Counted from the stretch's first letter, positions 7,226-63,425 are shown. The stretch: DNA of 64,000 bases from Penicillus capitatus (GCA_965649825.1 OZ287698.1:1441949-1505948); one strand, 5' to 3'. Numbers and translations: made by a program. Notes: a model not told the origin generated them from the sequence alone.

Positions 7226-7241
7226 CGAAAATGATGCGCGA

Positions 7242-43706: not shown

Positions 43707-43775
43707 GATGTGATGCTGTGTGTGGATGGTGTTGTTTGTGTAAATACGAATGCTTCCGGTTAATTGTATCGAATC

Positions 43776-43848: not shown

Positions 43849-44098
43849 GCCTATTGCATTCCTACCTTTACCCACGGTTCAGAACTCGCCGAGAAAAGAA
43901 GACCACCACGAGGAAAGAACGATCCCTCGCGATGCTGGCCGTTGACAAAACCGCCCGCGATCGATTTTGCAAGATGTCGACGAAGTGGATGATGGGATGG
44001 AGTGGTCAACACGATGTAGGCTTTGTTATGGGACATACGGCAGGTGGACCGCGCCCAGTCTATCCCTATCGACATAACCATAAGGTCGAGTGCGTAAA

Positions 44099-44170
44099 TT
44101 CCGCTGCCGGGAATCGAACCCGGGCCTTCTGAGTGAGAGTCAGAGATCATAGCCACTAGACTACAGCGGA
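44099..44170 (-). tRNA. tRNA-Glu(CTC)
   Basis: Acceptor stem TCCGCTG/CAGCGGA, anticodon arm TCTGA-CTCTCAC-TCAGA, T-loop GTTCGATT. Confidence 0.93.
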
Positions 44171-44262
44171 AGACATCTTCTACCGCATGGTTTTGTTTTA
44201 AATCACGTCCGTCTGGGAAAAACCCGTTCTAAGAGCATTGCAACTAAAAATCTCGTTCTCCG

Positions 44263-45038: not shown

Positions 45039-45087
45039 AGCGCTCGATCCGACGGGCGAGAATACCTCTCTATGCATTCAAGGACGC

Positions 45088-45146
45088 CATGTCTATCTGG
45101 AATGAAGATCCGGCGACAATCAGGATCTGATGCGACAGATGGCATG
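45088..45146 (+). ncRNA. Putative SECIS element (compact)
   Basis: An 11-bp lower helix, an AUGA(45102)/UGAU(45128) non-Watson-Crick core and a GAUCC/GGAUC upper helix, about 50 nt after the SelT stop. Confidence 0.6.
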
Positions 45147-45358
45147 TCCGTTCGCGACATCTCCTTGTAGAGCAGGCAGACAGACAGTCTACGAAATCTA
45201 TTACGCTTTCGAAAAACATCCCTTCACATCTTTCGTGATCCGTCATTGTACAGCACAGTCGAGTCCCGCCACCAAGGTCATCTTCAGGATGTTGTGTTGC
45301 CACAGTCAAAGCATGAGGTCTGTTCGTTCGTTCGTCTGTTCATGCCACGCGCGTGTCT

Positions 45359-45936
45359 TCAGTAGAAGAGATCTGGCAGTGCGCCGTAGATGGTCTGAGG
45401 TGCTGGCTCGCCAACTTGGGATCTCGCATTCATCTCTCTCAACGCCTGACGGGCAAAGCTCCGTGTGCGTGGCGGCTCAGCTCGTTGCATCTCGGCATTG
45501 CGTTCAGCCTGGAGCGTCGTTCTTTGACGATCCCATTTGACCCTATCCGTCGATGGCATCTCTTGATACCCGCGTGGTCTCCTGCGGCAACCTCGATCGC
45601 ATGTCGTCTTCGTGATCGAGGTTTGACTTGAAGAGAAGGATGTGGCGTTCTGGTTTGTGTATCGCGTAATGCATCCAACCCCCAGACTGCGTCACACCAA
45701 GTGCCCGCCATTCCGTCTACGCATAACGATCGCATTGTCCGCCGCGTTTGCGATTCGAACGCGCCGTACCTCTTTCATCAAACGCTGTTCCGGGATACGT
45801 CGAACGTATTCCTTCGGCAAAACGACGTGTCTACATATCACACGACATCCTCCCACACTCCAGACGTCTCAGCGTCGCACCGGTATTCGAATTGATCGTC
45901 GGTGTAACGCTCCGAGTATTCGAAGTTGCGCGACAT
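45359..45936 (-). CDS. CKS1: Cyclin-dependent kinase regulatory subunit with extended C-terminus
   Basis: Not in the ORF track. [19 protein letters not shown]|[12 protein letters not shown]|[29 protein letters not shown]|KRP. Three GT-AG introns. Confidence 0.93.
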
Positions 45937-46112
45937 GACGGCGGCGATCGAGACAAGGAGTCAAAGGAAACAGACGTCGGCTCGAGTACACTCGGGAGAA
46001 GCGCCACTAGATGACGTCCATCCACATCATAACCTCGATCGATGTCGATGTTACGTGCCACTACTAACGAGTTGACAAGTGTTGTCGACGCGATTCGTGC
46101 GTTGCAAACTCA

Positions 46113-46631
46113 ATGGGTCGAATTTACGTCGAGTATGTGGAGGGGCGCCCCTATCGTTGTCGCCATTGCCACTGCCATCTGGCCACGGCCGATGACTTGT
46201 TGTCCAAAGTACCCTTAGCCTTCACGGCGACCGTCTCGACCGTCGAGTGCGTTCGTGTGTTTGCAGCAATTCCATTCGAAGAACGGAAGAGCCTATCTCT
46301 TCAAAGGCGTGGTAAACGTGTGCTTTGGCTCCAAAGAAGAGCGCCTCATGACAACGGGTGTCCACATTGTCCGTGACGCATATTGCATTGGATGCATGCT
46401 ACCCGTCGGCTGGAAATATGTAAGGGCCCATTGCACGATGCGGAGTGGTCAGGAACGGTGACTGGGGTATGTTCGTTCGTGTAGGAAGTTGCTTATGAAT
46501 ATGAACAGAAATACAAAGAGGGCAAGTTCATTCTGGAATGTGTCAAGTTGGAGACAGAGACAGGGTCACACGATCCTTGCTTTCCTGGCCAGGAGATGCG
46601 TTTCTCAGAACTCGGTGCAACCTGTCCCTGA
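46113..46631 (+). CDS. Yippee-like zinc-binding protein
   Basis: YRCRHC..LSK|QFHSKNGRAYLF..RLMTTGVHIVRDAYCIGC..VGWKY|E..KYKEGKFILE. Confidence 0.93.
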
Positions 46632-46674
46632 CATCCATCTGGCCCAGTAAGAAAGGGAGGCGGGGATGGACTCC

Positions 46675-47065
46675 TTAAAACGACGCGATCGGGCGTGATG
46701 GGACAGGTGTGTCTGTAGGGGAGGAGACCTGGGATGGCTGTGTCTGTACACTAGCGGATGGATGGATCGGTGGGTGCGTGTGTGGGTGGGTGACGGTTAC
46801 CTTTCTTTCGACATACTCCACAGCACAACACACCGCTCTTAGCATTCTGTGTTTTTTATTCTTGCGGTCGTCGGACAATTCTGTACACAGAACTAAAGCC
46901 TGCCAGCTGGTTTTGGATCTTTTTTGGAGCTAAGTTATCCTCTGTATGTACGCATGTACCCATAAACCCTTTGAAAGACACAGGATTCGTTCGCTCTTCA
47001 ATCTCTGGCTGGTCTGTCTCTGGTATGGAAGCACAGCGATGTCTCGGCGTTTTGTCTTCAGCCAT
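46675..47065 (-). CDS. Possible small hypothetical protein
   Basis: MAEDKTPRH.. and ..MLRAVCCAVEY.. frames can be joined by a GT-AG intron. No family recognised. Confidence 0.25.
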
Positions 47066-47206
47066 GATTCTTTTGATTTGACGACGGTTCAATGAAAATC
47101 TAGATGAATGCATTTTGAGGTGTCAAAATGGTCAGGCGTCTCATTCCGCTGCGTTTCGGATTGCGGCTGCCGTGCAGAAGCGCCACGTCGATTGCCGCAG
47201 GTCGTC

Positions 47207-48895
47207 ATGTTATCGCGACTAGCTTATGTTACGCGACGATTGGGAGGAGAATCGATATTGCCCAGCAGCAGTGTCGCCGTCGCCATGTCTTCGGCAGAAC
47301 GCGTCGGCACGACACAGATCGACACGTTCCGATGCCTCAATACATTCTGTATGATAGGATCGACGATGCGTCTGTTCGCCACGGGCGAAAAGATCAAAGT
47401 GACGGAACCGGTCGTCGATCTGGACGGCGACGAAATGACCAGGTCGTCTCGACCTCTCCGAAACCTCCAGCACACCATTCTAACGCGATGCTGTCTGTAG
47501 AGTGATCTGGAGAATGATAAAAGAAAAGGTCCATTCGGATGGCTCGTGACAGAAATGAGATGCCTGTTTGGCGGCCCTGTTGACTGTAGTTGATATTTCC
47601 GTACGTGGATGTGAACATGGAGTACTACGATTTGGGTTTGCCGCATCGAGATGCCACAGACGATCAAGTCACGATCGATGCGGCTCATGCCATAAAAGTG
47701 TGATCGCTCACTCTTTTGCCTTACATACAGATGCCGACCACACGATATACAGAAACACAAAGTTGGTATCAAATGCGCAACGATCACACCTGACGAAGCA
47801 CGCGTGGAAGAATTTAAGCTTAAGAAGGTCAGGAACCGCGTCGGCAGTCTGTTGCTGGTGTGGCACTGGTGCGGTGCAGATGTGGAAGAGTCCCAACGGA
47901 ACGATCCGTAATATACTGAACGGTACCGTATTCCGTGAGCCCATTGTGGTGTCGAATATTCCAAGACTGGTTCCGGGATGGAAGAAGCCGATCGTCGTGG
48001 GCAGACATGCATTTGGCGATCAGTATCGCGCCACAGACATGTTGGTGAGCAGTCCCGGAAAACTCGAACTCGTTTTCACTCCCAACGACGGCGGATCGCC
48101 CGAAAGACACGAAGTCTTTGACTTCGCCTCTAACGGAGGCGTGGGACTAGCCATGTACAACACGGACGATTCGATTCGTGGATTTGCCAAGTCCTGTTTC
48201 GAATATGCCCTGCAGAAAGAGTGGCCACTTTACCTATCGACCAAAAACACGATTCTGAAGAAGTATGATGGCAGGTGAGATGGCCTGGATGGTCAGAGGG
48301 CTGTCAGACATGACATATGTGGTGGTTCAGATTTATGATGCTCTTTCAGGAGATCTACGAAAAGGCTTACCAGAAGAGATTCGAGGATGCCAAGATCTGG
48401 TATGAGCATCGACTCATCGATGACATGGTCGCTCAGGCGCTCAAGTCTCAAGGAGGATTTGTGTGGGCCTGCAAGAACTATGATGGCGATGTGCAATCGG
48501 ATATCGTGGCTCAGGGATACGGGTCTCTTGGCCTCATGACGAGTGTTCTGGTCACACCAGACGGTCAAACCGTCGAGGCGGAAGCGGCCCATGGGACAGT
48601 GACACGTCACTGGCGTCAGTACCAGAAGGGCCAACCGACATCGACCAACCCCGTCGCCAGTATCTTTGCCTGGACCCGTGGTCTGGAACACAGAGCCAAG
48701 CTAGATGGCAACACCGCTCTGGGCAAATTCTGTGCGGATTTGGAGAAAGCCGTGATTCTGACCATCGAAGACGGCGACATGACAAAGGATCTAGCCATCT
48801 GTGTGCACGGCACTTCGAAAGTGACACCTGACCAATACCTAGCAACGGAGCCATTCATGGACAAGATTGCTGACAAACTGGCGACGTTGATGTGA
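47207..48895 (+). CDS. IDH: NADP-dependent isocitrate dehydrogenase, organelle-targeted
   Basis: [61 protein letters not shown] and [12 protein letters not shown]. Five introns. Confidence 0.97.
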
Positions 48896-50719: not shown

Positions 50720-50783
50720 AGAGGCCCAACGCAAAGACGTCCCATCACCAGCCTTTCGTCGACGTCTTGCTCGCTGTGTGAAG

Positions 50784-52950
50784 ATGCTGTTGGCGGGACG
50801 CTACCAGAGACTCGACGTCATCGGTCGCGGCTCCTTTGGAGATGTCTACCGAGGGTATGACCACATCCATTGCCTAACAGACGCACCAATGTGTCTTCCC
50901 GATTCAGTATCGACACGCGAACCGACAGAGAAGTCGCCCTCAAAGTCATCGAGCTCGATAACTGGTAACATCTATCCTTCTCACTACTCGATACATACAC
51001 GAGTACATATGCCCACAGCCAAGATGATATCGACGATATTCACAAGGTGTGACCCAGAAACGCAATTCCTGAAAAGAGTGAGAGAATGAGTGAGATGTGG
51101 ATTGGACAGGAAATTGCTGCTTTGGCCAACTGCAGTTGTCCGAATATCACCGAATACTACGACTCCGTTATTTTTCAGGACTCTTCTGAACTGCTCATCG
51201 TGATGGAGCTAATGGCCTGTGCCGTCTCAGACTTGGTAGACAACAATACATGACGCGATCAGCCCATAACACAGCGCAATGTCTTTTCAGATTCAGATGG
51301 CGCCTTTGGATGAACTGCTTATTGCCTTTGTGCTCAGAGAAGTGCTTCAGGCCTTGGCATATCTGCATGATCAGAATCGTATGCACCGCGATATCAAGGC
51401 GGCGAATGTTTTGCTCTCTCGTCAGGCCAAAGTGAAGATTGCAGATTTTGGAGTGGCTGGTCAACTGACAGGCACCTTGGCCTTCAAGAGCAAGACATTT
51501 GTGGGCACACCATACTGGATGGCCCCCGAGGTGATTCAGTCTTCAGAGGGGTATACTAAGACGGCAGATGTGTGGTCCTTGGGCATTACTGCCATTGAGA
51601 TGGCGCACGGCCGTCCACCGAGATCCGATATGAATCCGATGAAAGTGCTGTTGATGGTGCCGCAAGCCGATCCGCCAGAATTGGAGGGGCCCTTTTCGGA
51701 TTGCTTTAAAGAATTTGTGAAGCTCTGTTTGACGATGGATCCTGAACAACGGCCTCCAGCCCATGCCCTTCTCACACATGATTTTGTTCGCCGAGCGACG
51801 GCGCCGCCAGATCTGGCTAGTCAGGTAAGACACATAGGAAGAGGTCGGCTGTTTAGGCGCGGTTATGTGGTTAGGTGGCTGCCGCTGTGGCACGACGTCC
51901 TCCGATTCCTCAGTTTCAGCGTGGACCCACACGTCCCCAACGACCCTCTCAGATTCCTGGCCCCAAATGGGATTTCGGCAAGTATAGTGGCGCGCCGCCG
52001 AGTGTCCGAATTCCGAGTCTCGATCAGGTAGTGCCTCTCACTCTCCTGATCGTATCACACATCGTGCAATGTTCATCAGTCCATGTCGATGGATGCGACG
52101 CGGACAACATTGGAAAGTCCGGGAAGTGCCATGAACTGGGGGAATACTGTAGAGGGACCACCTATATCGCCCATCCATGAGAACGCTTTTGCGGGAGGGA
52201 CAGTGAAACGGGAGACGGGATCGCGTCCGTCTTTGGCACAGACGCTCATGACTCAGAGCAGTTTGACAGGAAACGAGGCACTGTTCAGTTCACGTTTCCC
52301 GGAACCCCCATCTCCTACAGCTGCCTCCTCTCAGCCCGTCCCGTTAGAAGTAAAATCGATAGCTTCTCGACAGCTTCGTTGTCTATGCCATCCATAAATG
52401 TAGGCAGAGCCATCGGGGACGTTGCCGAATGCCTCGGTCAGTCGTATCACAAGTCAAAGCAGTTCATTCAAATCGCCCTCAGATGGCGGCGTCTATATGC
52501 AACTACTGCATCCGGCCTTTACGACGGCCTGCAAAAATCATAACATCTCTGAGCTGACGCCAACGGTCCTGTCTAGCCTCGAAGAAATCGAACGCCGAGT
52601 GCACCTTTCTTTGACGCTTTTCACTCCACGTGATACACCTACCTCTCTGTCATAGGCACCAGGTGTGCTGCTGACCATGATGAGCGAGTTGCTGAACATC
52701 CTGAGCACCACCGATGCTGTCACCATGCAACCGTTGCTGCAAACATTGCTCGTGAACTCAGGCCTCATCCATCAACATCAAGCTCAGGATACCGATGACA
52801 TTAAGTCCCTCGGGAGCTTTCTCCTTTCACGGTCACATCCCACCTTTCCTCTCCGGCCATAACTGGCGGCGCTTTTCTTTTAGATGGAAGGGACCTGTTG
52901 CCAGTGATATGCTTATCATGATGCTCAATGCCATGAAGCTTAAACAGTGA
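50784..52950 (+). CDS. STE20/GCK-III-like Ser/Thr kinase (plant MAP4K-alpha-like)
   Basis: IGRGSFGDVY, VALK, HRDIKAAN, DFG and FVGTPYWMAPEVI; C-terminal ERRAPG..LLSRW region. About nine introns. Confidence 0.93.
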
Positions 52951-53018
52951 AAGCATTCAGAGTGCCATTGCGTTATGACAAGGATGGACTACAGCGTCTT
53001 AACGCACAACAATAATCA

Positions 53019-53606
53019 TCACTTTGTCGTGCTCTTGGCTGTGTAATCTTGGGGATCCGATTCCAACATACTGCATCGAACCAGCACAACAGAATGAGAT
53101 GCGTCGTCTACAGAGGGTAAAGCATCCATACCTGACGGAACTCCTCACAATAGCTCTGCCAATGGCATTGATCCAGTCCTCCTTTTCTTTATCGGTATCC
53201 GCTATGAAGAACATCCGATCAGGTTCGTTAGTGGTGATTTCGAAGGAATTGGGTTTGTTCAGCGTATCTTCAGCTCCCTTTATTGACAGGCAACTGTTTA
53301 CAAGGATGACACCGCGCGGAACGCTTTCCTGTCAAGAATGCTGTGTTAGAGGCCAAGACATGGTCGACAGTGTTGAGCTGACCGACGTCACGATGTCCGA
53401 TTTGAACCAGAAAATTTTTCCCTGTTTTAGAACAAACCAGCGTCGACGCCATGTCTTGATGTACTCTCCTGTGACGAGATTTCGACAATGGAGGGATAGA
53501 AAGAGAAGGCCGGACCTTGTTTCATCAGCCATCCGGCTCGTTCGGGACTCTCCCAAAACGGAGTACTCGTCATCGATGAGGCACTACGTCCAAACAGTTG
53601 ATGCAT
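53019..53606 (-). CDS. Small PH-domain protein (AtPH1-like)
   Basis: PERAGWLMKQGEYIKTWRRRWFVLKQGKIFWF..PRGVI..CLSIKGAED..FFIADTDKEKEDWINAIGR. Three introns; alternative start at 53573. Confidence 0.92.
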
Positions 53607-53751
53607 GGACATCTCCGTTACGAACACACGAGAGTTGCATCCATCAATGTCACATCATGAGACGCGATCAAAGCAGGCAAGGATATCGCAATGGATGGCG
53701 GACGATTGAGTGAGCGAACGTACGAACGCCGTTAAAAAACGAACGCAGACT

Positions 53752-55449
53752 TTACACATGCAGATGTTTGCGTGCTCTCTTGCGACGCGAACGGAAGAGG
53801 GCGACCAAGACAGACAGAACAAAGGCAGTGAGTGCCACTGCTGTAATATAGGTGGGCAGATAGAAAGACGAGACTTCGACAGGACGGCCCGTGAGGTGCA
53901 GACGACTGTGATGATAATTGTCTGCTTTTATGTCGCCCCTTGCCACAAAGACACGGCATCTTATATCATCCATAATTTTGTCGATTCCCAGGTGGAGGCA
54001 GCGAATCTTCTCCATCGCCTCCAGTCGTTGAGCATCCGATTGTGATGTGACACTTGAATCGGATTGGGCGTAGCTGAAACTCGGCAGAGAAGGAATATAC
54101 GTACGACAGATCTCACACGACGCTCGGCAATTGTCTCGCATATACATCCACGTGTTGTCGCACTCTTTTCTCTGTCTCCAGTAGAGGCAGAACTCGTGAT
54201 CATCGTGACAGATGACGCCAGGGATGTGCAGGTACGCATACATCTCGTCCAATTCCTTCTCGATCTTGTCCACGATGCCACACTGCTCCTCGACGGCTTC
54301 TTTCTGATCGGTGCATTCGCGTCGATGCCGCTCGCACAATGCCTTGTTGATGGTATTGACGACATCGATGGCCAGCAGATGGCTGTACTTCTTTCTCGGT
54401 TCTCTCTCTGTGATACTACTCTTGGGATAGGGCGGATGCAGCAAGAGACCGATGTCTTCGGCTGTCTTTCTGTTGGCGCTCATGTTCCAAGGCGGACACC
54501 GCAGAGACTCGAAATCAAAGTGCTCGTGTTTGCTGAAGACATAGTTGCCCACTTCATTCCTGAGTCCATAGTGGACAATGACTGGGATGTCTTTCACTGG
54601 ATATCCAGGGTAGTACTGCACGGCTGACTCGACCTTGTGTCGGATTCCGACCTTTGCAGCGGCAAAGACGTAACCGTACATCTCCGAAATCCATGCCTTC
54701 TGTCCTTGCTTAATTTTGGTATCGCCGGTTAGATTCCAGGCATTGGGATCTTCTCGGACAGCCTCGGTGTAGCTCAGCCACAGTGGAGCGATTTTGGCTA
54801 AATCGCGTGTCCTCACAAAGTAAAAGGCCCCGGCTTCGTCTGCCCGTCTGCCCGATGGTCCACCATAGTGATCTTCTTTTCGAGGGACGTCCGGTATGTG
54901 CCGATCTGCCAAGGCGTTGTTCACTCCTGCGAGGTAGTTGTAGTGTGAGGACAGCGCATATCCTTCTGGGACTTCGAAGTCTTTCAGCGTAAAAGGTTGC
55001 TTGAATATCATATCTGGGTCCAAAATGAGAGTCCATTCAGCTGTCGGGAGTCGTTCTGCCAACCAAAACATCATGGAGACAGGCTTGTTGTAAGGCTGAT
55101 AGTAGTCTCCCGTAATGGGATGCTGTTTCCAGTTAGGCACGACGAGGGTGTCCATAATGGCCAAGTCCTCGTCCTTCAGCTTCTCCTTAGCTTCATCCTC
55201 GTTGCAGCTGATGACTCGGGTAATTTTTCCAGGCTGCCCCACTTTGTCGAAGGTATACTTCATCGCGAGCGCCTGGTAAACGAAATACGACTTGAAGCAT
55301 TCCGTTGAAATGACCACATGAATCGCCCCCTTCTCGGACCCGATAACAGGGTCGTCTAAGATAGTCGGCAGCGCTCTTTCTGTACTAGCATTGACTAGGA
55401 GGATCCTTCCGGCGAGGACCAAGTATACGAGTATGCGCCAATCCTGCAT
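53752..55449 (-). CDS. Peptidyl-serine alpha-galactosyltransferase / HPAT-like glycosyltransferase with ShKT domain and C-terminal TM
   Basis: Intronless. HVVISTEC..QPGKITRVISC, YNKP, ILDPDM and WISEMYGYVFAAA; ShKT CHDDHEFC..W..ECD..M..NCRASCEIC. Confidence 0.85.
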   Translation of the reverse strand: MQDWRILVYLVLAGRILLVNASTERALPTILDDPVIGSEKGAIHVVISTECFKSYFVYQALAMKYTFDKVGQPGKITRVISCNEDEAKEKLKDEDLAIMDTLVVPNWKQHPITGDYYQPYNKPVSMMFWLAERLPTAEWTLILDPDMIFKQPFTLKDFEVPEGYALSSHYNYLAGVNNALADRHIPDVPRKEDHYGGPSGRRADEAGAFYFVRTRDLAKIAPLWLSYTEAVREDPNAWNLTGDTKIKQGQKAWISEMYGYVFAAAKVGIRHKVESAVQYYPGYPVKDIPVIVHYGLRNEVGNYVFSKHEHFDFESLRCPPWNMSANRKTAEDIGLLLHPPYPKSSITEREPRKKYSHLLAIDVVNTINKALCERHRRECTDQKEAVEEQCGIVDKIEKELDEMYAYLHIPGVICHDDHEFCLYWRQRKECDNTWMYMRDNCRASCEICRTYIPSLPSFSYAQSDSSVTSQSDAQRLEAMEKIRCLHLGIDKIMDDIRCRVFVARGDIKADNYHHSRLHLTGRPVEVSSFYLPTYITAVALTAFVLSVLVALFRSRRKRARKHLHV

Positions 55450-55494
55450 AGAAGCCGAGAAAGAACTCTCGATGCAACTACAATGATGTGACCG

Positions 55495-56526
55495 CTACAA
55501 GAAGAGAACGGGCTCTTGAAAGACGTCTCCCGTCTTTTGAAAACAGATGTGACAGGCTTTGAGTTTCTGTTTGAGTTCCAAGACCGATTCAAGCGTCAAG
55601 GCGTCGCAGCGCATGACCCTTAAATCACGTAAAGGGAGAGAACTGAGTGACTGGACAGTGCCTTGAGGCATCAAGAGATGGCAGAAGTTCGCGATGAGAG
55701 AGGTGAGGTTCTTGCATCCCCTCAAATGTACAAAGGAAGCATCGGAGACATCGGTTGACGAGACGTCCAGCAGTTGCAGGCAGGACAGGGCACTCAAGTG
55801 GCGGAATCCACGTCCACGAATCCCCTTGGATGAAGAGAGGCACAGTGCTGTGAGTCTGGTAAGGGCAGAAAGAAAACGCAGCCCGTTATCATCGATGCTG
55901 CATTTCTGTAAAGACAGCTTCTCCAGCCTCGACATCGAGGAGAGAAAGAGATAGTCGGCAGAATCCAGAGTGCCATCTCCATCGAATTCGAGTCGGGTAA
56001 GCTGCGCCAAGCGTGTCAGAGACGGAACGCCCCGAGCTGTGATGGTGAGATAGCCGCCAATGTGCACCGATCGCAGTCCGGAACAGCAGGTGAGAACCTC
56101 CAGTGCTCTGTCATTGATGTGACGGATCTCGAGTTGCTGCAGTTGCGTGAGAGACGAGAGACAGTGTAGCTCGGAATACATAAGGATCGATTCAGAGATT
56201 TCTGCCACAGGATCGGACATGAGAGCAGACGGAGTGCAGGGTTTGCATCTCTTGAGGTCCAAGACACGAAGAGAGGGGCATTGGGTCACCATATACGATA
56301 ACTGTTTCAGATAACACCTGGGAGCCAAGAAATGCAAATTCTTCAAAACAACGCGTCGCCAATTTCGACAGACAGAAGCCGCTTCACGCAGTGTCCATGT
56401 CCAGGGGTCCTCAAATGGCGCATCGGAGTCGCCTCGTTGGCGTTCAATATAGAGGACGCACTTCGCAAATACGTCATCGGGCAAAGAAGACCAGCAATGA
56501 CACGTGCTTTCCATGATGTCTGACAT
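55495..56526 (-). CDS. F-box/leucine-rich-repeat protein
   Basis: WSSLPDDVFAKC..ASVCRNWR F-box, then LRRs (LTRLEFD, LEKLSLQKC, LQLLDVSST). Intronless; the upstream ORF extension overlaps the zf-CW gene. Confidence 0.88.
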   Translation of the reverse strand: MSDIMESTCHCWSSLPDDVFAKCVLYIERQRGDSDAPFEDPWTWTLREAASVCRNWRRVVLKNLHFLAPRCYLKQLSYMVTQCPSLRVLDLKRCKPCTPSALMSDPVAEISESILMYSELHCLSSLTQLQQLEIRHINDRALEVLTCCSGLRSVHIGGYLTITARGVPSLTRLAQLTRLEFDGDGTLDSADYLFLSSMSRLEKLSLQKCSIDDNGLRFLSALTRLTALCLSSSKGIRGRGFRHLSALSCLQLLDVSSTDVSDASFVHLRGCKNLTSLIANFCHLLMPQGTVQSLSSLPLRDLRVMRCDALTLESVLELKQKLKACHICFQKTGDVFQEPVLFL

Positions 56527-56568
56527 GACGCAACGCTGTTCGATGTCATTATTGCTGGTTTGCAAAGA

Positions 56569-57250
56569 ATGAAGATGCAAGAAGATCCCAAAGTCGAGTT
56601 TGTGGAGGATTTGTGGGTGCAATGCGATGCGCCTTCGTGTCGAAAATGGCGGCGACTGCCAGCAGGGACTGTAGTGGATGATCACGTCCGTTGGTACTGT
56701 CGGATGAATCCCGACACGCGATACAACGCCTGCGATATCGAAGAGGAGCACTATGACGAACGGAATGAGATTCTGTTGACGGCTGCCAAGGCCGAACCTA
56801 AACCGAAAGGACGACATCGTTCAAAGCGACGCAAACAGGACGCCAAGACGGAACCTGCCGAGAAGGCCATCTCGCCAAAGGCAGAGTTACAGAAACGGCA
56901 GCAATGGTGCGAGAAGAAGCTCAAGGCATTGGCAGAATCACTCGAACGGGTCGCCTGGACACACGAAGACCAGCAGTACCTCCACGTGCACGCTCCGGAA
57001 GGCGCCAAACGTGTGCTGGAATGCCTGGATCTCTCTTCTGCCCTCGCCTACTTCACACAGGTCGTACACGACCCCCTATATCAACGTCAGGCCACTGACG
57101 ATCTTGATTCCTCACGGTGTGCAGACAGCGGATGATCAACGGCAGTCGATGCTGGAGCAGATCAAAGAGGTCCATCAGTTACATCTGAAACAGGCATTGG
57201 AGCAGGCCATGGGAGATATTCAGGGGATGCTGAAAGAGCTCTCGACTTGA
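56569..57250 (+). CDS. CW-type zinc finger protein
   Basis: WVQCDAPSCRKWRRL..WYCRMNPDTRYNACDIEEE, followed by a basic NLS-like stretch and a coiled coil. One probable intron. Confidence 0.88.
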
Positions 57251-57338
57251 GGGATATTCGGTATCGCGCTGCGCCGCTTGGACGCTGTCGTTTCATGTCT
57301 TGCGCCTTGACATTGTCTTCATTCTTTGCTGCTTCTAC

Positions 57339-58925
57339 ATGAATGTTTCTTCCGCGTGTCTCGCGGGAATGGTCGGCCGATGCGTCGTACCGGCCGTTCG
57401 ACATCATCTGAAGACCAGGAAGGAAGTCCATGACTTCGCACATAAGGACACGATCCAGTGGAACAGTCGTCACTCGTGGCGCTATCTGTGCGGTCGGACG
57501 GATTTGGACGGTCCAGCGCCTCTCTCCACGAAAACGATGTCAGAATCTCCTCTGCTTGACGGCACGCTTGAATTTTCGTTCTGGCGGGAATGTCTAACAC
57601 TTTTGACGCTTAGCACTCCTGCTCTCTTTCAAGGATTCTTGGCCATCGGTCTGACCTCTGTTGTTTATCTGTTCATGGGGAGACTCGGTTCCTTGCCCCT
57701 CTCCATTGCCTCTCTGTCTTTTTCTTTCTTTACATTAACTGGCTCCTCTGTCGTTTCCGGTCTCTCCATGGGCATCGAAACGATTGGAGGGCAGGCCAAT
57801 GGAGCAGGAAATGCACAGCTGGTCTCCGTCGCCTTTCTACAGGGATTGTCCTCATCGCTGATCGCCTGTATCGTGATCTCGCTGGCATGGAGTCAAGCAG
57901 AATGGGTTTTCTTGAAGCTCGGTCAAACCCCTTCCATAGCAACCAAAGCTGCACATTATCTGCAGTTACTGATTCCTTATCTCTTCACCGAAGTCATCTT
58001 CTCTTGTCAAGCAAAAGCCTTGGAAGCGCGCGGCATCGTCCGGCCAATAACCACTGCCTGTGGTCTTGCTATCTTCATTTCTCCTTTGCTTTCTTGGTTC
58101 TTGATATTCAAAACGCGATTTGGCATGTATGGCGGCCCCATTGCCCTCACACTGATCAGTTTGTTTACTGCAGTGACGCTGAGCATCTGGACGCATCCCG
58201 TCAAGATCGTGGAGTCCGGTTCCGTGGCACAGATGATGAAAGAGGGCTGGGGATCATTCCGTCGATACATGTCTGTGACATTGCCAGGCTTGGGAACCGT
58301 GTGTAGTGAATGGTGGACGTACGAGGTCTTCACTGTCTCCGCAGGCATCCTCCCATCTCCAGAACTCAGTCTGGGCATCATGGGTGCTTCCAACACTATC
58401 ATTAACATTCTCTTTGTCGTGGCGTTGGGCCTGGCAACGGGTGTGCTGGTCAGAGTGTCGAATCTCTTGGGAGCAGGGTATACACGCAAGGCCATTGCTT
58501 CGGCGCGGACGGCTGTGTTCATCGCCGCCATCTTCGAAACTGTCAGCCTCATGACCATCTGCCACTTTGCCCGTCCCATCAGCAGCATCTGGTTCAGTGA
58601 TCCGACAGCCGAAAGCATTTTTGTCTCCGCCTTGCCCCTTATCTCCCTGACGGAATGGGGATCTGGAATGAGCTTTGTCTTGGGTGGCATTCTTCGAGCC
58701 TGTAATCGAGGCAAGTATGAATTGTTTGCAAATTTTAGTTGTTATTGGTTTGTTGGTATACCTCTGGGACTATTCCTCGGCTTTGCTTCCCACATGGGCA
58801 TCATTGGATTTTGGATCGGTTTAGCCACAGCCGCAATATTGCAGTCCATTGTTTTAGCATTTGTCGTGTGCCAATTGAATTTCGATTTGGAGATGAAACG
58901 TGCGCATCAATTAACCGATGTGTGA
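57339..58925 (+). CDS. MATE-family efflux transporter
   Basis: Intronless, multi-TM. GLSMGIETIGGQANGA, CSEWWTYE, VRVSNLLGAG, GGILRAC and YWFVGIPLG. Start uncertain (57339, 57369 or 57538). Confidence 0.92.
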   Translation: MNVSSACLAGMVGRCVVPAVRHHLKTRKEVHDFAHKDTIQWNSRHSWRYLCGRTDLDGPAPLSTKTMSESPLLDGTLEFSFWRECLTLLTLSTPALFQGFLAIGLTSVVYLFMGRLGSLPLSIASLSFSFFTLTGSSVVSGLSMGIETIGGQANGAGNAQLVSVAFLQGLSSSLIACIVISLAWSQAEWVFLKLGQTPSIATKAAHYLQLLIPYLFTEVIFSCQAKALEARGIVRPITTACGLAIFISPLLSWFLIFKTRFGMYGGPIALTLISLFTAVTLSIWTHPVKIVESGSVAQMMKEGWGSFRRYMSVTLPGLGTVCSEWWTYEVFTVSAGILPSPELSLGIMGASNTIINILFVVALGLATGVLVRVSNLLGAGYTRKAIASARTAVFIAAIFETVSLMTICHFARPISSIWFSDPTAESIFVSALPLISLTEWGSGMSFVLGGILRACNRGKYELFANFSCYWFVGIPLGLFLGFASHMGIIGFWIGLATAAILQSIVLAFVVCQLNFDLEMKRAHQLTDV

Positions 58926-58939
58926 AATCCATAGACACC

Positions 58940-60520
58940 ATGCATACACCGTTTGACGATTCCTTCGCGATGCTTCGAATGGACGACGGTCCCACACGAG
59001 CGTCGTCGGCCACAACGAAAAACGCAAAGAAACAAAGCTCGCGACAGGGCAGAGACCATACCGATAAACACGTGGCCACTTCTCCGATACACCAGACGCA
59101 TGCCGACAAACACGACACCGATTTTCAGGATCCGATCGAGAGCACGAGACACAGGACCTCCACCGAAAGAGGTAAGGCTCCCCAGAGTAACGTCAGATGC
59201 CAAGAGAGTTCAGGAATTGGATATAAGTCGTTCTCTGAGAGCGCCGTTTCGCAATGGGAGGGATTTCTGTTTCGGAGTACGACGTCGACAGAAGAGTCTG
59301 CTCGTACCAGGGTCTACAATACGCTGTTCCGAGTTCCTTATCATCTGGAACGGTTCATATGGACAGGAGTCGTCTGCTGTCTCAATATCCTTCTGGTAGG
59401 GGCATTCTGCACTCTCTATGCTCTCGATTGTCCCTGTTTGCCGTTAGCATAGACGCTCATATGCTGTCTGCCAATTCGCACCGTTCTGCGCCTTCTGAGA
59501 GGCGAACGAAAAAGCGGTGTGCTGTTTGACGCCATCTGGTGTGTGACACTTGTGCTGGGCGTGTATCTCCATGCAGCTTTCATCGAACCTGGAATGCTCT
59601 ACTTTGGAATGAAGGACTTTACAGCCGAGTTTCTGAAGATCACACTCGTCTACGTCGCACTGGACGTTGCCGACAAGGTCACGCACATATCTGCCTCTCC
59701 ACAAGCACGAAATCTCTTGCCTTCTCAGATCATGTCCAATGTGGGCGTTGACGTTATCCGAATGCTGACAGAGAGTTGCGAACTGTACTGCAGTGGCAGG
59801 ACTGCCTGGTTCAGTCTCGTATTCGATTCTCTTCTCTTCATGCTCATGGCATGGCTGCACAGTCTCATCGTCATGAGCATCGCCATGGTGTGGTATATGT
59901 CGATGGAGAGCGAGAAGACTATTCTCGCTTTCATGATCATCAGCAACTTTGGAGAAATCAAGACCTCTGTCTTCAAGAGATTTGATATCAAGAAGTTGTT
60001 CATTCTCTGTCGTATGGATATTATCGAACGGGTCAATCTCTTCATTGCCACGCTGTTTATTGTCGTGGAGGATCTCGGTCAAGTCGGAGTGTGGACAATG
60101 AATCGAGATATTCTCATCAACTGCGCAGCGATTCTCATTTTGGAATCGGTCGTCGATATCATCAAGCACTCGGTCGTGGTCAATTTCAATGGAGTGCGGC
60201 CAGGAATCTATAGAGAGTATCTCAAAGATATCTGCCAGTCACATCTGGAACGTGGGGAGCAAGGATCGGTCGAGAAATTGGTCTTCGAGCCTATCGGTGC
60301 GTCCATTCTCCTTTCGAGAGTCGTCGTTTCTGCTCTGTCTGTTGGAAGCCGCCCCCAGAGCATCCAGTTACCATGCCTTCTGATTCTGTTGCTGCTTCTC
60401 TTGGCCGCGAAGCTGCTGATCGGCTGGTGTCTGCAGTTGGGTGCCGTCTGGTATGTGCGTTACTTTGAATCGCGTTATGGAGAGGGGGGAAAATCGGACA
60501 AGAGCATAAAACAGTCTTAG
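58940..60520 (+). CDS. TAPT1: TAPT1/POD1/Emp65 (DUF747) ER membrane protein
   Basis: LFRVPYHLERFIWTG, DVADK, ISNFGEIKTSVFKRFD, MDIIERVNL and ESVVDIIKHS. Two introns. Confidence 0.9.
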
Positions 60521-60706
60521 CAGACATGACTTACAGGCCGTTGTCTTATATCGGCTGCACATTCTTGATTGTCTACACTAGATCATCATCTTCTTTAAGA
60601 CAGCTTGTTCACAATAAAGGGCCTCAGAATCGAAGGGGGATCTGATAGCAAGGAAGAAAAGACAGCATTCTGCTGGTAATAAACGGAAAGGGTTCATACG
60701 ACTGCC

Positions 60707-62285
60707 CTAGAATCGCACAGCATAGGACGCTTGCTTGATGCAGTTCTGACTCTTGAGTGCCACCGGCGTTGATCTTTTTGCCGTCAGCGTGTGGCTAAGA
60801 ACTTCCAACAACGATCCTCGGGGCACCGAGACACAGGAAATCTTCATCGGCTGATGCGCCTCGAGCGCCAACGGGTTGCAAAGATGAGGAGCTTCGAATG
60901 CATAGACCTGAACGGACTGGGCGATCTGGGACCCGCCGGTGTGCGCAAGCATCCACTCGGGAACAGCAAGGGCTATGACGGAGTTGGTTCCGCTGTACTG
61001 ATCGAAGTGCGTTGTCAGTGAACCCTGTCCGAGAACGTCGATCGTGCCAACTTGAGTCACTTCGTTCCCGACAATCTCCACGACAGCTGCCTGTGTGACG
61101 CCGATGGGCGGGGGTCGCACAGGGACACCCGATGGACACGCCAATGTAGCGTTTGTAGATAGTCGTGGTGCGGCAGCGTCCGGCGTTGTCTCCAGGACGG
61201 TCGCCGTGCCATCGGCGCCATTTGGCACGGATAACTGCGACGCTGTTCCTTGGGGTGCGTGTCGAGCACATGACAGCGCCGTCTGAGGTTCTGCACAGCG
61301 TTCTGCCTGTGCCGTCGGGTGTTGTATCGCGCGCAGAACAGAAGGCGGGCCGTATACTTGCTCAGAATCCAGCTGTGCGGTCGCGATGACGTCGATGCCT
61401 GACAGAACTGTACAGACGCAGCGGAGCAGCTGCTGCAGGTTTGCAGTCTCCACTGGACATCGTTCCACCTCCATCTCTGCAAGAAGGCGCCTCGAGCAAA
61501 GTGGTTCCTATGGTAAGACGATCCCGCCTGGGTCTGTCACCCAGACACCATCTTGCCTTCGTTGCTTTCAGTACTCTCAGGAGGCGGACGACGAACTCCG
61601 CCAGGCAGTTCTCAGACGTATCAGAAGCGGGCAGCTGGCCTGCAAGAAAAGAAGGCGCGTGTCTGACAGCGTCCCCCGCGATGCTCACGTTCGGCCTGAT
61701 GCTGCAGGAAGCGGCTGCAGATTTCTGCTACTCGTTCGGCCCCCGTCCACGACCAAGCATCGCATCCCTCACGTTTCACGACCTGCGGACTCGCGCCCTC
61801 GGTCGAACGCCGATCTCCTGTGCCATTCGACGCACCTCGAGCGGAGAAAGAACGTCGACGATGAACTTTAACGTAGACTCGGGAATTTCAAGAGCGTGGG
61901 CAGCCTGCGGGATTCTAAAATGAACGGCGGTGCCTCCGTCGCTTCGTCCTGCGAAGGCGACAAAGCGTTTGACGCCATCGCACAAACCTGCCGCGCCACC
62001 GTACAATCTCGTTGAGCGAGGTGGTTGTTCACTTTCTACGCTTGAAGGTAGAACTGTCGGCGCCTGCTCGACGCTCTCCTTTGCGTTCTTCACATTCAAG
62101 GACTGCAGCCCTTCGATAGCAGCCAGCTCTCTCTTGTCAATCATGGACAAGTGCAGAAAGAGCTCAGCGAAGTCTTTGCGCCGGCCACGCTTCGCACGCT
62201 TTCCTCTCGTAAGCTGCGGCTTCGTCAAAGCGGCCTGGCGTCGCCTTCCTTTCGCACGATTCCCTTTTTCGTTTCTCTGCGTCAT
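60707..62285 (-). CDS. Hypothetical protein with basic N-terminus
   Basis: Three frames joined by a GT-AG intron and a GC-AG intron (61508-61556). No family recognised. Confidence 0.6.
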
Positions 62286-62858
62286 TGCGTTCACCTAAGA
62301 GCAACAGCACATTTGCAATGCACTAACAAGACAGCAAACTGCCAAGAATCGGGGCATTTCTTGACCGACCTAGCGCGATGCGGCTAATAATGCCAAGCGA
62401 AGAAACAGTGTCACGTTTGGAGGTTCACAGAAAGAGATGCCGTCCAAAGCAAAAAACAATAGAAAGACGTGTTGGTTGGAAGCTACGGTCGCGAGCCTTC
62501 GAGAACACCTTCCCATCTGTCGTCATGCGACGCGACGCCGCGGGACGAGAGAGTTCAAATGGCGCCGCGAACGCGTACTGCGGACACGCTTTTCGTGTGC
62601 GAGGTCGAATTGGCGTATACAGGCGTTGCCACGCATGTAAGCGACATGCAGATTACTTTGCGCCACGTGTGCACCGTTTTTCAATGCGTTTATCTTCACA
62701 GCACCTCGGTTTCTTGTGCTGTTGTCGTCACTGCCACGTTTCCTCGTTCAATATTGTGCGTGATTGTGCAATAAGTTTGTCTGGTTGGGAAGGAAAATAA
62801 AATAGCGTCCGATATGAAGTTTACGACGCGATCGAATCTGAGCGATTGTAAAGCGTTC

Positions 62859-63425
62859 ATGCAATTCGGTCCTCCTTCAAGAACATCATGTCACGCTGTA
62901 CCCGTCAAGGCTTTTTCTTACTGTGCAAAAAATAGACATGCGCATCGGCGCAGACAAAGCACAAGACGTCAGAGTTCGGAGGGAGAGGAGGTGAAGAGGC
63001 AAACCATCGACGAGCACTTTTGGTCAGAAGTCGAAGCGGCGCAGGAAGAGTTAGCGCGTCTGGAGCGCGAAAGGGAAGATTCTCTGCAGAAAGGTCTCCC
63101 ATGTTCGTTGTATTTCTTGTCCTTCAAGCAGAGTTCTGTCAGAATAGTCCGTCGCTTTTCCAAAAGAACGGACCGTCTTTTTCATTCTATTTCGGGTCTC
63201 TACGAAGAAGCTTTGAAACAAGTAAAATCAGGAAATGAAGAAGAAGCGCGTAAATCCCTCATGGTGCGTTGAATACTCACTCGATCTTTGTTGACATGTG
63301 GATGTCTTTACCTATACTAGACGAAGGCTGCTGTCGTTCGGGCGACCCACGTGGCGCAGGAGAAAGCATCAGTGCACTCTGCACTTGCGAGGAAGCTTGA
63401 AGAGGCCATTTGTAAGGATGACTAA
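62859..63425 (+). CDS. Putative plastid coiled-coil protein with a PspA/VIPP1-like segment
   Basis: Transit-peptide-like N-terminus and two introns. LYEEALKQVKSGNEEEARKSLMTK resembles the PspA AxxxxxxGxExxARxxLxxK pattern. Confidence 0.5.

What the first reader, a model, noticed from the sequence alone, without database searches (positions are those of the whole stretch)
53019..60520. Six-gene divergent operon-like cassette driven from a ~42-nt ATG-to-ATG gap
Seen: the order is PH <- SGT1-like <- F-box/LRR | zf-CW -> MATE -> TAPT1. The divergent ATGs (56526 and 56569) are 42 nt apart. Same-strand stop-to-start gaps are 45 nt (F-box to SGT1), 88 nt (zf-CW to the earliest MATE ATG), 14 nt (MATE to TAPT1) and about 145 nt (SGT1 to PH). 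Established: polycistronic nuclear mRNAs are reported in Chlamydomonas, Chromochloris and Auxenochlorella, where leaky scanning past a short first ORF has been proposed. Inference: these gaps cannot hold a 3' UTR, poly(A) site, promoter and 5' UTR. The upstream ORFs here are 1.0-1.6 kb and AUG-rich, so leaky scanning looks implausible, pointing to reinitiation, processing, or promoters buried in coding sequence.
Basis: partly seen in the sequence, partly recalled or inferred. Interest (0 to 1): 0.85.

Follow-up and report, generated by a model that had tools for sequence, protein, structure and literature searches.

The report
Tightly packed six-gene algal block
Six unrelated genes of a Caulerpa-like green alga are packed with only 14 to 145 bases between them, but the same crowding surrounds them, so this looks like ordinary genome compaction with overlapping gene signals rather than a shown operon.

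Summary
The anatomy is real. The order is PH <- SGT1-like <- F-box/LRR | zf-CW -> MATE -> TAPT1. The window is nuclear DNA of a green alga whose nearest named relatives are Bryopsidales (NADP-IDH 87% identical to Caulerpa lentillifera).

The order is kept in two related genomes and partly in a third. Every gap stays short, but the lengths drift (MATE->TAPT1 is 14, 14, about 120, then 66 or about 300 nt).

The six genes are not a distinct unit. Their flanks are just as tight: a 64-nt divergent gap and a 70-nt convergent gap. A 16-nt tandem gap lies 46 kb away.

- An intact, selected SGT1 paralog lacks the F-box gene and the 42-nt gap.
- One relative has F-box with no SGT1 behind it.
- SGT1's stop codon sits inside a conserved TGTAA.

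Leaky scanning is excluded, because the upstream ORFs hold 15-27 ATGs. I found no reinitiation motif and no unusual RNA structure.

The best reading is separate transcription units whose promoters and very short UTRs overlap neighbouring coding sequence. A bicistronic MATE-TAPT1 mRNA is not excluded. No RNA data were available, so this rests on inference.

The parts
53019..53612 (-). PH-domain gene. Exons 53612-53516, 53468-53383, 53328-53132 and 53070-53019. Introns of 47, 54 and 61 nt. Stop TGA at 53019-53021.
   Evidence: Spliced model gives Pfam PH at 8e-22. One exon is 95% identical at protein level in L004 and L010.
53613..53751 (-). SGT1->PH spacer of 139 nt (145 nt to the second ATG at 53606). 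It is the least conserved stretch, with 25 gap positions against L002.
53752..55449 (-). SGT1-like peptidyl-Ser alpha-galactosyltransferase / HPAT-family gene with a ShK domain. It has no introns. The stop TAA is embedded in TGTAA (53752-53756).
   Evidence: Pfam. Homologs named peptidyl serine alpha-galactosyltransferase. Substitutions by codon position against L002 are 54/32/160. TGTAA at the stop also in L002 and L004.
55450..55494 (-). F-box->SGT1 spacer of 45 nt, stop-free and in frame with both ORFs. The first 30 nt are conserved in L002 and in the paralogous locus L003.
55495..56526 (-). F-box/LRR gene with no introns. The conserved start is ATG 56514. Stop TAG at 55495-55497.
   Evidence: LRR families and a borderline F-box hit in Pfam. 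Substitutions by codon position 27/9/60. The ORF upstream of 56526 shows only the zf-CW phase.
56527..56568 (.). Head-to-head ATG-to-ATG gap of 42 nt. It contains TGACGCAA. The equivalent gap is 28 nt in L004, 42 nt in L010 and about 58 nt in L002.
56569..57250 (+). zf-CW gene. Exon 1 is 56569-57060, the intron 57061-57124 (64 nt) and exon 2 57125-57250.
   Evidence: Pfam zf-CW at 1e-15. The intron is marked by indels and 25% divergence, and exon 2 is coding-like.
57251..57338 (+). zf-CW->MATE spacer of 88 nt. It holds the 14-mer TCTTCATTCTTTGC at 57316-57329.
57339..58925 (+). MATE transporter gene with no introns. ATG at 57339 or 57369. The N-terminal 66 aa look like a transit peptide and evolve fast.
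   Evidence: Pfam MatE at 1.5e-37. tblastn to L004 starts at 57468. Periodicity 37/17/107 from 57537.
58926..58939 (+). MATE->TAPT1 spacer of 14 nt. The TAPT1 ATG sits in an ACC-ATG context. Upstream ATGs lie 19 and 45 nt before it.
58940..60520 (+). TAPT1/DUF747 gene. Exon 1 is 58940-59395, the intron 59396-59452 (57 nt) and exon 2 59453-60520.
   Evidence: Pfam DUF747 at 2e-38. Intron model. tblastn to L004 and L010.
52949..53018 (.). Context: a 70-nt convergent gap between the STE20-like kinase stop (52946-52948, +) and the PH stop. The plus-strand TGTAA at 53042 lies inside the last PH exon.
50720..50783 (.). Context: a second tiny head-to-head gap of 64 nt between the helicase gene (ATG 50719, -) and the kinase (ATG 50784, +). 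It holds an inverted pair of GACGTCTT.
7226..7241 (-). Context: a 16-nt tandem gap between the stop of a 977-codon DUF7906 ORF (7242-7244) and the ATG of an amino-acid permease (7225).

Best explanation
This is a conserved, very gene-dense stretch of the nuclear genome of a compact Bryopsidales-like green alga. It is not a dedicated operon. I infer that each of the six genes is its own transcription unit. The two head-to-head genes share a minimal bidirectional promoter region that spills into both coding sequences. Each downstream tandem gene (SGT1, PH, MATE, TAPT1) starts transcription in the tiny spacer or in the last part of the upstream gene's coding sequence, giving a very short leader. 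Upstream genes end transcription within or just after the start of the next gene. Read-through RNAs that span two genes probably exist as by-products, but they are not needed for translation. The anatomy, the conservation and the flanking compaction are shown. The positions of transcript starts and ends are inferred.
For: 1. Compaction is not confined to the cassette or to same-strand pairs.
- There is a 70-nt convergent gap (kinase/PH), a 64-nt divergent gap (helicase|kinase) and a 186-nt convergent gap (TAPT1/g255).
- A 16-nt tandem gap lies at 7226-7241.
- By my rough tally of ORFs and Pfam hits, the window holds about 33-36 genes in 64 kb.

2. SGT1 works without its upstream partner.
- In L003 an SGT1 paralog is intact and under purifying selection (substitutions 83/55/205 by codon position).
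- The F-box sequence upstream of it has a 284-nt deletion and 1-nt indels, and the divergent gap is absent.
- About 70 nt around the old F-box stop remain 83-87% identical.

3. An ATG-free stretch of 159-167 nt precedes the SGT1 start in the window, L003 and L004, running into the F-box CDS (P about 0.04 each).

4. In L004 all six start codons are preceded by 77-342 nt without any ATG, reaching into neighbouring CDS (Monte Carlo P < 5e-5). This is what separate leaders would produce.

5. A TGTAA overlaps the SGT1 stop in three species and the F-box stop in L004. UGUAA is the chlorophyte poly(A) signal, about 17 nt before cleavage (PMC1868727).

6. L010 has F-box followed by at least 450 nt of non-coding DNA and no SGT1.

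7. Gap lengths drift between species (14 against about 120 nt; 45 against 141 nt). No fixed stop-to-start geometry is kept.

8. There is precedent. Encephalitozoon cuniculi has 5' UTRs under 7 nt and overrunning transcripts alongside monocistronic ones (PMC2803860).
Against: - No transcript data exist for this organism in the collections searched. The SGT1 and TAPT1 searches returned only genomic contigs for it and its near relatives.
- In the window species itself the ATG-free stretches before TAPT1, MATE, F-box, zf-CW and PH are short (19-41 nt). Separate leaders would have to be very short or carry upstream ATGs.
- No TGTAA follows F-box, zf-CW or MATE before the next gene's end. Gallaher et al. 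read that pattern as a sign of polycistrony (PMC7896298). Here TAPT1 and PH lack one too.
- In known green algae, tandem inter-ORF distances under 100 nt are typical of bicistronic loci (PMC11291117).
- The genome is not uniformly packed. The stretch 43.7-47.8 kb shows little coding signal.
Confidence: 0.55

Rival explanations
1. True polycistronic expression of at least one same-strand pair, most plausibly MATE->TAPT1 (14 nt) and perhaps F-box->SGT1 (45 nt). One capped, polyadenylated mRNA would carry both long ORFs. The second ORF would be translated by termination-reinitiation, shunting or internal entry, or after RNA processing.
For: - The stop-to-start gaps of 14 and 45 nt are identical in the 86%-identical relative L002.
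- No TGTAA lies between the F-box stop and the SGT1 stop, or after the MATE stop.
- The TAPT1 ATG has the strongest context of the set (ACC-ATG) and lies 14 nt after the stop.
- Short inter-ORF distances mark bicistronic loci in Chlamydomonas, Chromochloris and Auxenochlorella (PMC7896298, PMC11291117).
- The MATE-TAPT1 adjacency is kept in four genomes.
Against: - The first ORFs are 1.0-1.6 kb with 21-27 ATGs, against a median ORF1 of 291-600 nt in known cases. Leaky scanning is therefore out, and reinitiation after long ORFs is known to be inefficient (PMC11291117).
- No UGGGA (TURBS-like) motif lies upstream of the MATE or F-box stops.
- The junction RNA folds are no more stable than shuffles, with z-scores of 0.65, -1.2 and 0.46.
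- The gap expands to about 120 nt or 141 nt in L004.
- An SGT1 paralog survives without F-box.
- Equally tight convergent and divergent gaps show that this genome packs independent genes this closely.
Confidence: 0.25
2. Two operons (F-box-SGT1-PH and zf-CW-MATE-TAPT1) are fired from a single bidirectional promoter in the 42-nt gap.
For: - The head-to-head arrangement, with under 60 nt between ATGs, is conserved in four genomes.
- All the same-strand gaps are short.
Against: - A conserved TGTAA at the SGT1 stop lies before PH.
- The SGT1->PH spacer is the least conserved segment, with 25 gap positions in 144 nt.
- L010 lacks SGT1 and has the PH/kinase pair inverted elsewhere.
- The L003 SGT1 paralog has no divergent gap.
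- The six products have unrelated functions.
- The neighbouring genes are just as tightly packed.
Confidence: 0.06
3. Annotation artefact. The real start codons lie further downstream, or the gene models are wrong, so the real gaps are of ordinary size.
For: - The TAPT1 N-terminus (58940-59218) and the MATE N-terminus (57369-57536) show no codon-periodic substitution (10/16/11 and 9/5/8).
- The F-box ATG at 56526 is not conserved in L002.
Against: - TAPT1 has no in-frame ATG after 58979 before the conserved domain at 59219. The 279 nt have no indel against L002, whereas non-coding stretches do. L004 and L010 encode similar basic N-termini.
- SGT1 starts with its signal anchor directly at ATG 55449, and it aligns from residue 1.
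- The L004 MATE ORF has the same N-terminal extension.
- At most, the gaps grow to 53 nt (TAPT1), 54-60 nt (divergent) and 118 nt (MATE).
Confidence: 0.07
4. Fusion proteins. The F-box stop is read through, or TAG/TAA encode Gln as in some Ulvophyceae, so that F-box and SGT1 form one protein.
For: - The F-box TAG and the SGT1 ATG are in frame, with a stop-free 45-nt linker, in the window and in L002.
- From my own knowledge, a non-canonical TAA/TAG=Gln code exists in Dasycladales, Cladophorales and Trentepohliales.
Against: - Homology-supported ORFs of 565 to 977 codons contain no TAA or TAG.
- In L004 a second in-frame stop follows six codons later.
- From my own knowledge, Bryopsidales use the standard code.
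- MATE and TAPT1 are in different frames.
- A GT..AG splice across the F-box->SGT1 gap would shift the frame (sequence read).
Confidence: 0.02
5. Operon processing by spliced-leader trans-splicing, as in kinetoplastids, nematodes or tunicates.
For: Only the very short intercistronic distances, which resemble tunicate operons.
Against: - To my knowledge, spliced-leader trans-splicing has never been reported in Chlorophyta.
- No motif or acceptor is shared upstream of the start codons.
- Rfam found no SL RNA in the window.
Confidence: 0.02

Closest known systems
Bicistronic and polycistronic nuclear loci of green algae (Chlamydomonas, Chromochloris, Auxenochlorella; Gallaher et al. 2021 PMC7896298; Duenas et al. 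2024 PMC11291117)
   Same: - Same-strand ORFs with very short inter-ORF distances. Published medians are 40-260 nt; here they are 14-145 nt.
- No UGUAA after the upstream ORF for three of the pairs.
- Colinearity is kept among related species.
- The host is a chlorophyte.
   Different: - Known ORF1s are short (median 291-600 nt) and are bypassed by leaky scanning. Here the ORF1s are 1.0-1.6 kb with 15-27 ATGs.
- A TGTAA sits at the SGT1 stop inside the supposed operon.
- The terminal genes also lack TGTAA, so that test is uninformative here.
- No transcript evidence exists.
- One downstream gene has a functional-looking paralog without its upstream partner.
Overlapping transcription units of compacted eukaryotic genomes (microsporidia such as Encephalitozoon cuniculi, PMC2803860; nucleomorphs, PMC6009652)
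   Same: - Gene density near one gene per 1-2 kb.
- Tiny spacers in tandem, divergent and convergent orientation.
- The implied need for very short UTRs and for signals inside neighbouring coding sequence.
   Different: - This is a free-living-type green algal nuclear genome with spliceosomal introns of 47-64 nt.
- It also has stretches of several kb with little coding signal. The compaction is regional rather than uniform.
- Transcript ends have not been mapped.
Bidirectional (head-to-head) promoter gene pairs
   Same: Divergent orientation with 28-58 nt between start codons, conserved across four related genomes. A second such pair (64 nt) lies next door.
   Different: The gap is far shorter than usual bidirectional promoters of hundreds of nt. 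The core promoter must overlap both coding sequences. Co-regulation is untested.
Spliced-leader trans-spliced operons (kinetoplastids, nematodes, tunicates)
   Same: Strings of unrelated same-strand genes with very short spacers.
   Different: There is no evidence of a spliced leader or a shared acceptor, and the mechanism is unknown in green algae. The block also contains convergent and divergent neighbours at equal spacing.

Membership tests
Green-algal polycistronic (bicistronic) loci | One capped, polyadenylated transcript carries two or more ORFs, and the downstream ORF has no transcript of its own. | not testable with these tools
   No RNA-derived contigs of this organism or its close relatives were returned. 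All related loci contain introns, so they are genomic DNA.
Green-algal polycistronic (bicistronic) loci | Colinear ORFs with an inter-ORF distance far below that of ordinary neighbours. | tested here: inconclusive
   The gaps of 14, 45, 88 and 139 nt are short. Ordinary neighbours in this genome are equally close: 64, 70 and 16 nt.
Green-algal polycistronic (bicistronic) loci | A short upstream ORF with a weak start context and few internal AUGs, allowing leaky scanning. | tested here: not met
   F-box is 1032 nt with 21 ATGs. MATE is 1587 nt with 27 ATGs. zf-CW is about 616 nt with 15 ATGs. None is depleted relative to composition.
Green-algal polycistronic (bicistronic) loci | No UGUAA poly(A) signal after the upstream ORF, but one after the last ORF. 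| tested here: inconclusive
   There is none after F-box, zf-CW or MATE. There is also none after the terminal genes TAPT1 and PH. SGT1, a middle gene, has a conserved one. Sense-strand depletion of TGTAA in ORFs is not specific.
Green-algal polycistronic (bicistronic) loci | The gene pair is conserved as a pair across species. | tested here: inconclusive
   MATE-TAPT1 and zf-CW-MATE are kept in four genomes. F-box-SGT1 is kept in three but absent in L010, and it is broken in the paralogous locus L003. The whole 14-kb neighbourhood is syntenic, not just the pairs.
Overlapping transcription units of compacted genomes | High gene density with very short spacers in all three orientations. | tested here: met
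   Six genes lie in 7.5 kb. By my rough tally the window holds about 33-36 genes in 64 kb. Gaps are 70 nt convergent, 42 and 64 nt divergent, and 14, 16 and 45 nt tandem.
Overlapping transcription units of compacted genomes | Mapped transcript ends lie inside neighbouring genes, and UTRs are very short. | not testable with these tools
   There are only indirect hints. ATG-free stretches run into neighbouring CDS in L004 and before SGT1. The kinase's nearest TGTAA lies inside the last PH exon.
Bidirectional promoter pair | A head-to-head pair with a short shared upstream region, conserved in orientation. | tested here: met
   42 nt in the window, about 58 nt in L002, 28 nt in L004 and 42 nt in L010.
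Bidirectional promoter pair | Co-expression from shared regulatory elements. | not testable with these tools
   There are no expression data. A TGACG-type motif in the gap is only a lead.
Viral-type termination-reinitiation (TURBS) | A UGGGA motif complementary to 18S rRNA within about 90 nt upstream of a stop/start site. | tested here: not met
   There is none upstream of the MATE or F-box stops.
Non-canonical ulvophyte nuclear code (TAA/TAG = Gln) | In-frame TAA or TAG inside conserved coding sequence. | tested here: not met
   Homology-supported ORFs of 565-977 codons have none. L004 has a second stop after F-box.

The most novel reading that the evidence does not exclude
MATE and TAPT1 (14-nt spacer), and possibly F-box and SGT1 (45 nt), are translated from bicistronic mRNAs. 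Their first cistrons are 1.0-1.6 kb long and rich in AUGs. A siphonous-type green alga would then use a route to second-ORF translation other than the leaky scanning shown in Chlamydomonas and Auxenochlorella. That route could be efficient reinitiation after a long ORF, shunting, or endonucleolytic processing into monocistronic units.
Probability: 0.2. Interest if true: 0.75.

Novelty: new member of a known kind. Interest (0 to 1): 0.35.

Why it matters
If the ordinary reading holds, the locus is a clean example of how far a green algal nuclear genome can squeeze independent genes. Start codons lie 28-58 nt apart head to head, stop codons 70 nt apart tail to tail, and tandem stop-to-start gaps reach 14-16 nt. 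Promoters, leaders and poly(A) signals must then lie inside neighbouring coding sequence. This is useful for annotating compact ulvophyte genomes and for finding minimal algal promoters.

If the rarer reading holds, it would extend algal polycistrony to long, AUG-rich first cistrons and would call for a new translation mechanism.

Either way the block gives well-defined junctions for a simple RNA test: 58926-58939, 55450-55494 and 7226-7241.

Tried and rejected
1. TGTAA as a test of transcript ends. The motif is rare (67 against about 125 expected), but sense-strand depletion in ORFs is shared by other TA-containing 5-mers. Absence after a gene is therefore uninformative.

2. A 'TG before the stop codon' pattern (17 of about 80 ORF ends). 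It is confounded by GTAAG/GTGAG splice donors and was dropped.

3. A home-made 3-periodic Markov coding map of the whole window. It overfitted its 11-kb training set and was not used.

4. Synonymous-site conservation at the 3' ends of F-box and MATE (0/9 and 0/12 third positions), together with the 59-nt perfect run at 58870-58928. Such runs are common (rank 10 of those in 20 kb), so this is not evidence.

5. The F-box remnant in L003 is 78-87% identical, against 64% at SGT1 third positions. One copy is still coding-constrained, so the excess over expectation is small. Only the loss of the ORF was used as evidence.

6. Shared promoter motifs.
- The SGT1-upstream element is unique to SGT1 loci.
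- The 14-mer TCTTCATTCTTTGC and the motif GACGTCTT are leads only.
- No common motif was seen upstream of 11 start codons.

7. A TURBS motif and RNA structure at the junctions. Both were negative.

8. Splice-out or read-through fusions and an alternative genetic code. Rejected.

9. Deeper synteny.
- The Bryopsis SGT1 homolog has other neighbours.
- The L008/L009 loci were not examined for the cassette genes.
- L012 starts inside TAPT1 and cannot show adjacency.

10. A search for transcript-derived contigs of this species. None was found.

Full report
**What is there.** The window is eukaryotic nuclear DNA with about 50% G+C and short GT..AG introns of 47-64 nt. Pfam confirms the six identities.
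- An SGT1-like HPAT-family glycosyltransferase with a ShK domain, 53752-55449(-).
- An LRR protein with a borderline F-box match, 55495-56526(-).
- A zf-CW protein, 56569-57250(+), with intron 57061-57124.
- A MATE transporter, 57339-58925(+).
- A TAPT1/DUF747 protein, 58940-60520(+), with intron 59396-59452.
- A PH-domain protein, 53019-53612(-), with three introns.

Every number in the finding was reproduced:
- 42 nt between the divergent ATGs;
- 45 nt from F-box to SGT1;
- 88 nt from zf-CW to MATE;
- 14 nt from MATE to TAPT1;
- 139-145 nt from SGT1 to PH.

**Whose genome.** The window's own proteins are not in the protein collection.
- A metagenome contig, L001, is 99.87% identical over 20 kb.
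- The nearest named homologs are from Bryopsidales. Caulerpa lentillifera is 51% identical for SGT1, 53% for TAPT1 and 87% for NADP-isocitrate dehydrogenase. Bryopsis is 49% identical for SGT1.
- I therefore treat it as an unannotated, Caulerpa-like ulvophyte.

**Are the start codons right?** I compared the window with L002, a relative 86.5% identical in DNA over the same 20 kb.
- The true coding parts show the expected excess of third-position changes: SGT1 54/32/160, F-box 27/9/60, zf-CW 6/1/33, MATE 37/17/107 and TAPT1 26/9/79.
- The long ORF upstream of the F-box ATG carries only the phase of zf-CW on the other strand, so F-box does not start earlier.
- The ATG at 56526 is ACG in L002. The conserved start is 56514, which makes the gap 54 nt.
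- The N-terminal 66 codons of MATE and 93 codons of TAPT1 show no periodicity. They also have no indels and stay open in the relatives. They encode the same kind of basic, low-complexity sequence in L004 and L010.
- TAPT1 has no in-frame ATG after 58979 before its conserved domain. Its start therefore lies 14-53 nt after the MATE stop.

**Conservation.**
- L002 has the same order and the same 45-nt and 14-nt gaps.
- L004 (SGT1 59% identical in protein) has the same six genes in the same order. Its gaps are 28 nt (divergent), 141 nt (F-box->SGT1), about 57 nt (SGT1->PH), 48 nt (zf-CW->MATE) and about 120 nt (MATE->TAPT1).
- L010 (TAPT1 60% identical) keeps F-box|zf-CW->MATE->TAPT1 with gaps of 42 nt, about 80 nt, and 66 or about 300 nt. 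It has no SGT1. F-box is followed by at least 450 nt of A+T-rich non-coding DNA, and the kinase/PH pair lies inverted elsewhere.
- All gaps therefore stay short across this clade, but no particular stop-to-start distance is preserved.
- The whole neighbourhood is syntenic, not just the six genes.
- The Bryopsis homolog of SGT1 has other neighbours.

**The cassette is not set apart from its surroundings.**
- Immediately to the left, a helicase gene (ATG 50719, -) and an STE20-like kinase (ATG 50784, +) are head to head with 64 nt between them.
- The kinase stop (52946-52948) and the PH stop (53019-53021) face each other across 70 nt.
- To the right, TAPT1 and the next gene converge across 186 nt.
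- Forty-six kb away, the stop of a 977-codon DUF7906 ORF is followed after 16 nt by the ATG of an amino-acid permease.
- Convergent genes cannot share a transcript. This genome therefore tolerates 3' ends, and by the same logic 5' ends, that are very short or overlap the neighbour.
- By my rough tally the window holds about 33-36 genes in 64 kb. It also has a stretch at 43.7-47.8 kb with little coding signal.

**Natural experiments.**
- On the same contig as L001, about 94 kb away, L003 carries a duplicated SGT1. It is 79% identical in DNA, intact, and under purifying selection (83/55/205 by codon position).
- Upstream of it, the F-box sequence has a 284-nt deletion and several 1-nt indels. 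Beyond about 420 nt all homology ends. About 70 nt around the old F-box stop and the spacer remain 83-87% identical.
- That copy cannot be the second cistron of an F-box-SGT1 mRNA, and it cannot be driven from the 42-nt gap. Whatever expresses it lies in or near sequence that is F-box coding sequence in the window.
- In line with this, 159-167 nt free of any ATG precede the SGT1 start in the window, L003 and L004.
- In L004 all six start codons are preceded by 77-342 ATG-free nt that run into neighbouring coding sequence (Monte Carlo P < 5e-5). This is the pattern expected if each gene has its own leader.
- In the window, L002 and L010 this signal is absent apart from SGT1. Leaders there would have to be 20-40 nt or carry upstream ATGs.

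**Poly(A) signals.** UGUAA is the chlorophyte signal and lies about 17 nt before the cleavage site, including in ulvophytes (PMC1868727).
- The SGT1 stop codon is embedded in TGTAA in the window, L002 and L004. The F-box stop is embedded in one in L004. This argues for a 3' end between SGT1 and PH.
- No TGTAA follows F-box, zf-CW or MATE. None follows TAPT1 or PH either.
- The depletion of the motif in sense ORFs is not specific. Its absence therefore says little here.

**Translation models.**
- Known algal bicistrons have short first ORFs (median 291-600 nt) and use leaky scanning (PMC7896298, PMC11291117).
- Here the first ORFs have 21 ATGs (F-box), 27 (MATE) and 15 (zf-CW), none below expectation.
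- I found no UGGGA reinitiation motif and no unusually stable RNA structure at the junctions.
- I found no way to splice or read through into a fusion. MATE and TAPT1 are in different frames.
- F-box and SGT1 are in frame across a stop-free 45 nt in the window and L002. L004 has a second stop there, and long conserved ORFs lack TAA and TAG, which excludes the non-canonical ulvophyte code.

**Verdict.** The anatomy is confirmed and conserved. It is best read as part of a hyper-dense gene block made of separate transcription units. These would have a minimal bidirectional promoter, promoters and leaders buried in neighbouring coding sequence, and overlapping or very short UTRs, as documented for compact genomes such as Encephalitozoon cuniculi (PMC2803860). 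I give this about 0.55. A real bicistronic mRNA for MATE-TAPT1, and less likely for F-box-SGT1, remains possible at about 0.25 and would be notable. The full two-arm operon model is unlikely. Nothing here rests on RNA data, which I could not find, so transcript mapping across three named junctions would settle it.

Noticed in passing
window 7219-7244 (-): A second ultra-short tandem junction. The stop of a 977-codon DUF7906 ORF (7242-7244) is followed after 16 nt by the ATG (7225) of an amino-acid permease. The permease has a 65%-identical paralog at 206-1346 without that upstream neighbour.
   Followed up: partly
L003 9650-14190 (same contig as L001, about 94 kb from the window region): A segmental duplication. 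An SGT1 paralog with a decayed F-box fragment upstream is joined directly to a 90%-identical copy of window 60460-62879 (the end of TAPT1 plus the next genes).
   Followed up: partly
window 55450-55497 (-): The F-box TAG stop and the SGT1 ATG are in the same frame, with no stop codon in the 45-nt linker. This holds in the window and in L002. Read-through would give an F-box-SGT1 fusion with a sensible membrane topology. L004 has a second stop there.
   Followed up: partly
L004, upstream of its six start codons: Every start codon is preceded by 77-342 nt without any ATG on the sense strand, extending into neighbouring coding sequence (Monte Carlo P < 5e-5). The window, L002 and L010 lack this except before SGT1.
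   Followed up: yes
window 50734-50741(-), 50761-50768(+), 55520-55527(-) and five other sites: GACGTCTT occurs 8 times against 2.8 expected. Two copies form an inverted pair inside the 64-nt helicase|kinase gap. One lies 71 nt upstream of the SGT1 ATG, inside the F-box coding sequence. It is a possible promoter-proximal element.
   Followed up: partly
window 56562-56575(-) and 57316-57329(+): The exact 14-mer TCTTCATTCTTTGC occurs only twice in the window. One copy ends 35 nt before the F-box ATG and the other 9 nt before the MATE ATG, each on the sense strand of that gene. It is kept in L002 but not clearly in L004 or L010.
   Followed up: partly
window 43776-43848(+), 44098-44171(-), 24256-24377(-): tRNA-Arg(TCG), tRNA-Glu(CTC) and a U4 snRNA gene. 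The two tRNAs account for two of the longest runs of perfect identity with L002.
   Followed up: yes
window 34363-34995 and 41273-41905: A 633-bp direct repeat at 99.7% identity. It overlaps ORFs with no Pfam match. It may be a young mobile element or a recent duplication.
   Followed up: no
window 25288-31725: A cluster of C2-domain and TerD-domain ORFs with internal tandem duplications of 66-81% identity.
   Followed up: no
window 51923-52025 (+): The last 35 codons of a kinase exon have no third-position change against L002, where about 6 are expected. Something besides the protein may be constrained there.
   Followed up: no
Caulerpa lentillifera EukProt models g3644 (TAPT1), g3654 (IDH), g3552 and g8017 (SGT1 homologs): TAPT1 and IDH are ten gene models apart in Caulerpa, close to their separation in the window. 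The SGT1 homologs lie elsewhere. The block's synteny, without SGT1, may therefore reach Caulerpa.
   Followed up: no
window 43744-47800: About 4 kb aligns well with L002, with several perfect runs of 50-95 nt, but shows no codon-periodic substitution. Apart from the two tRNAs its content is unknown.
   Followed up: no
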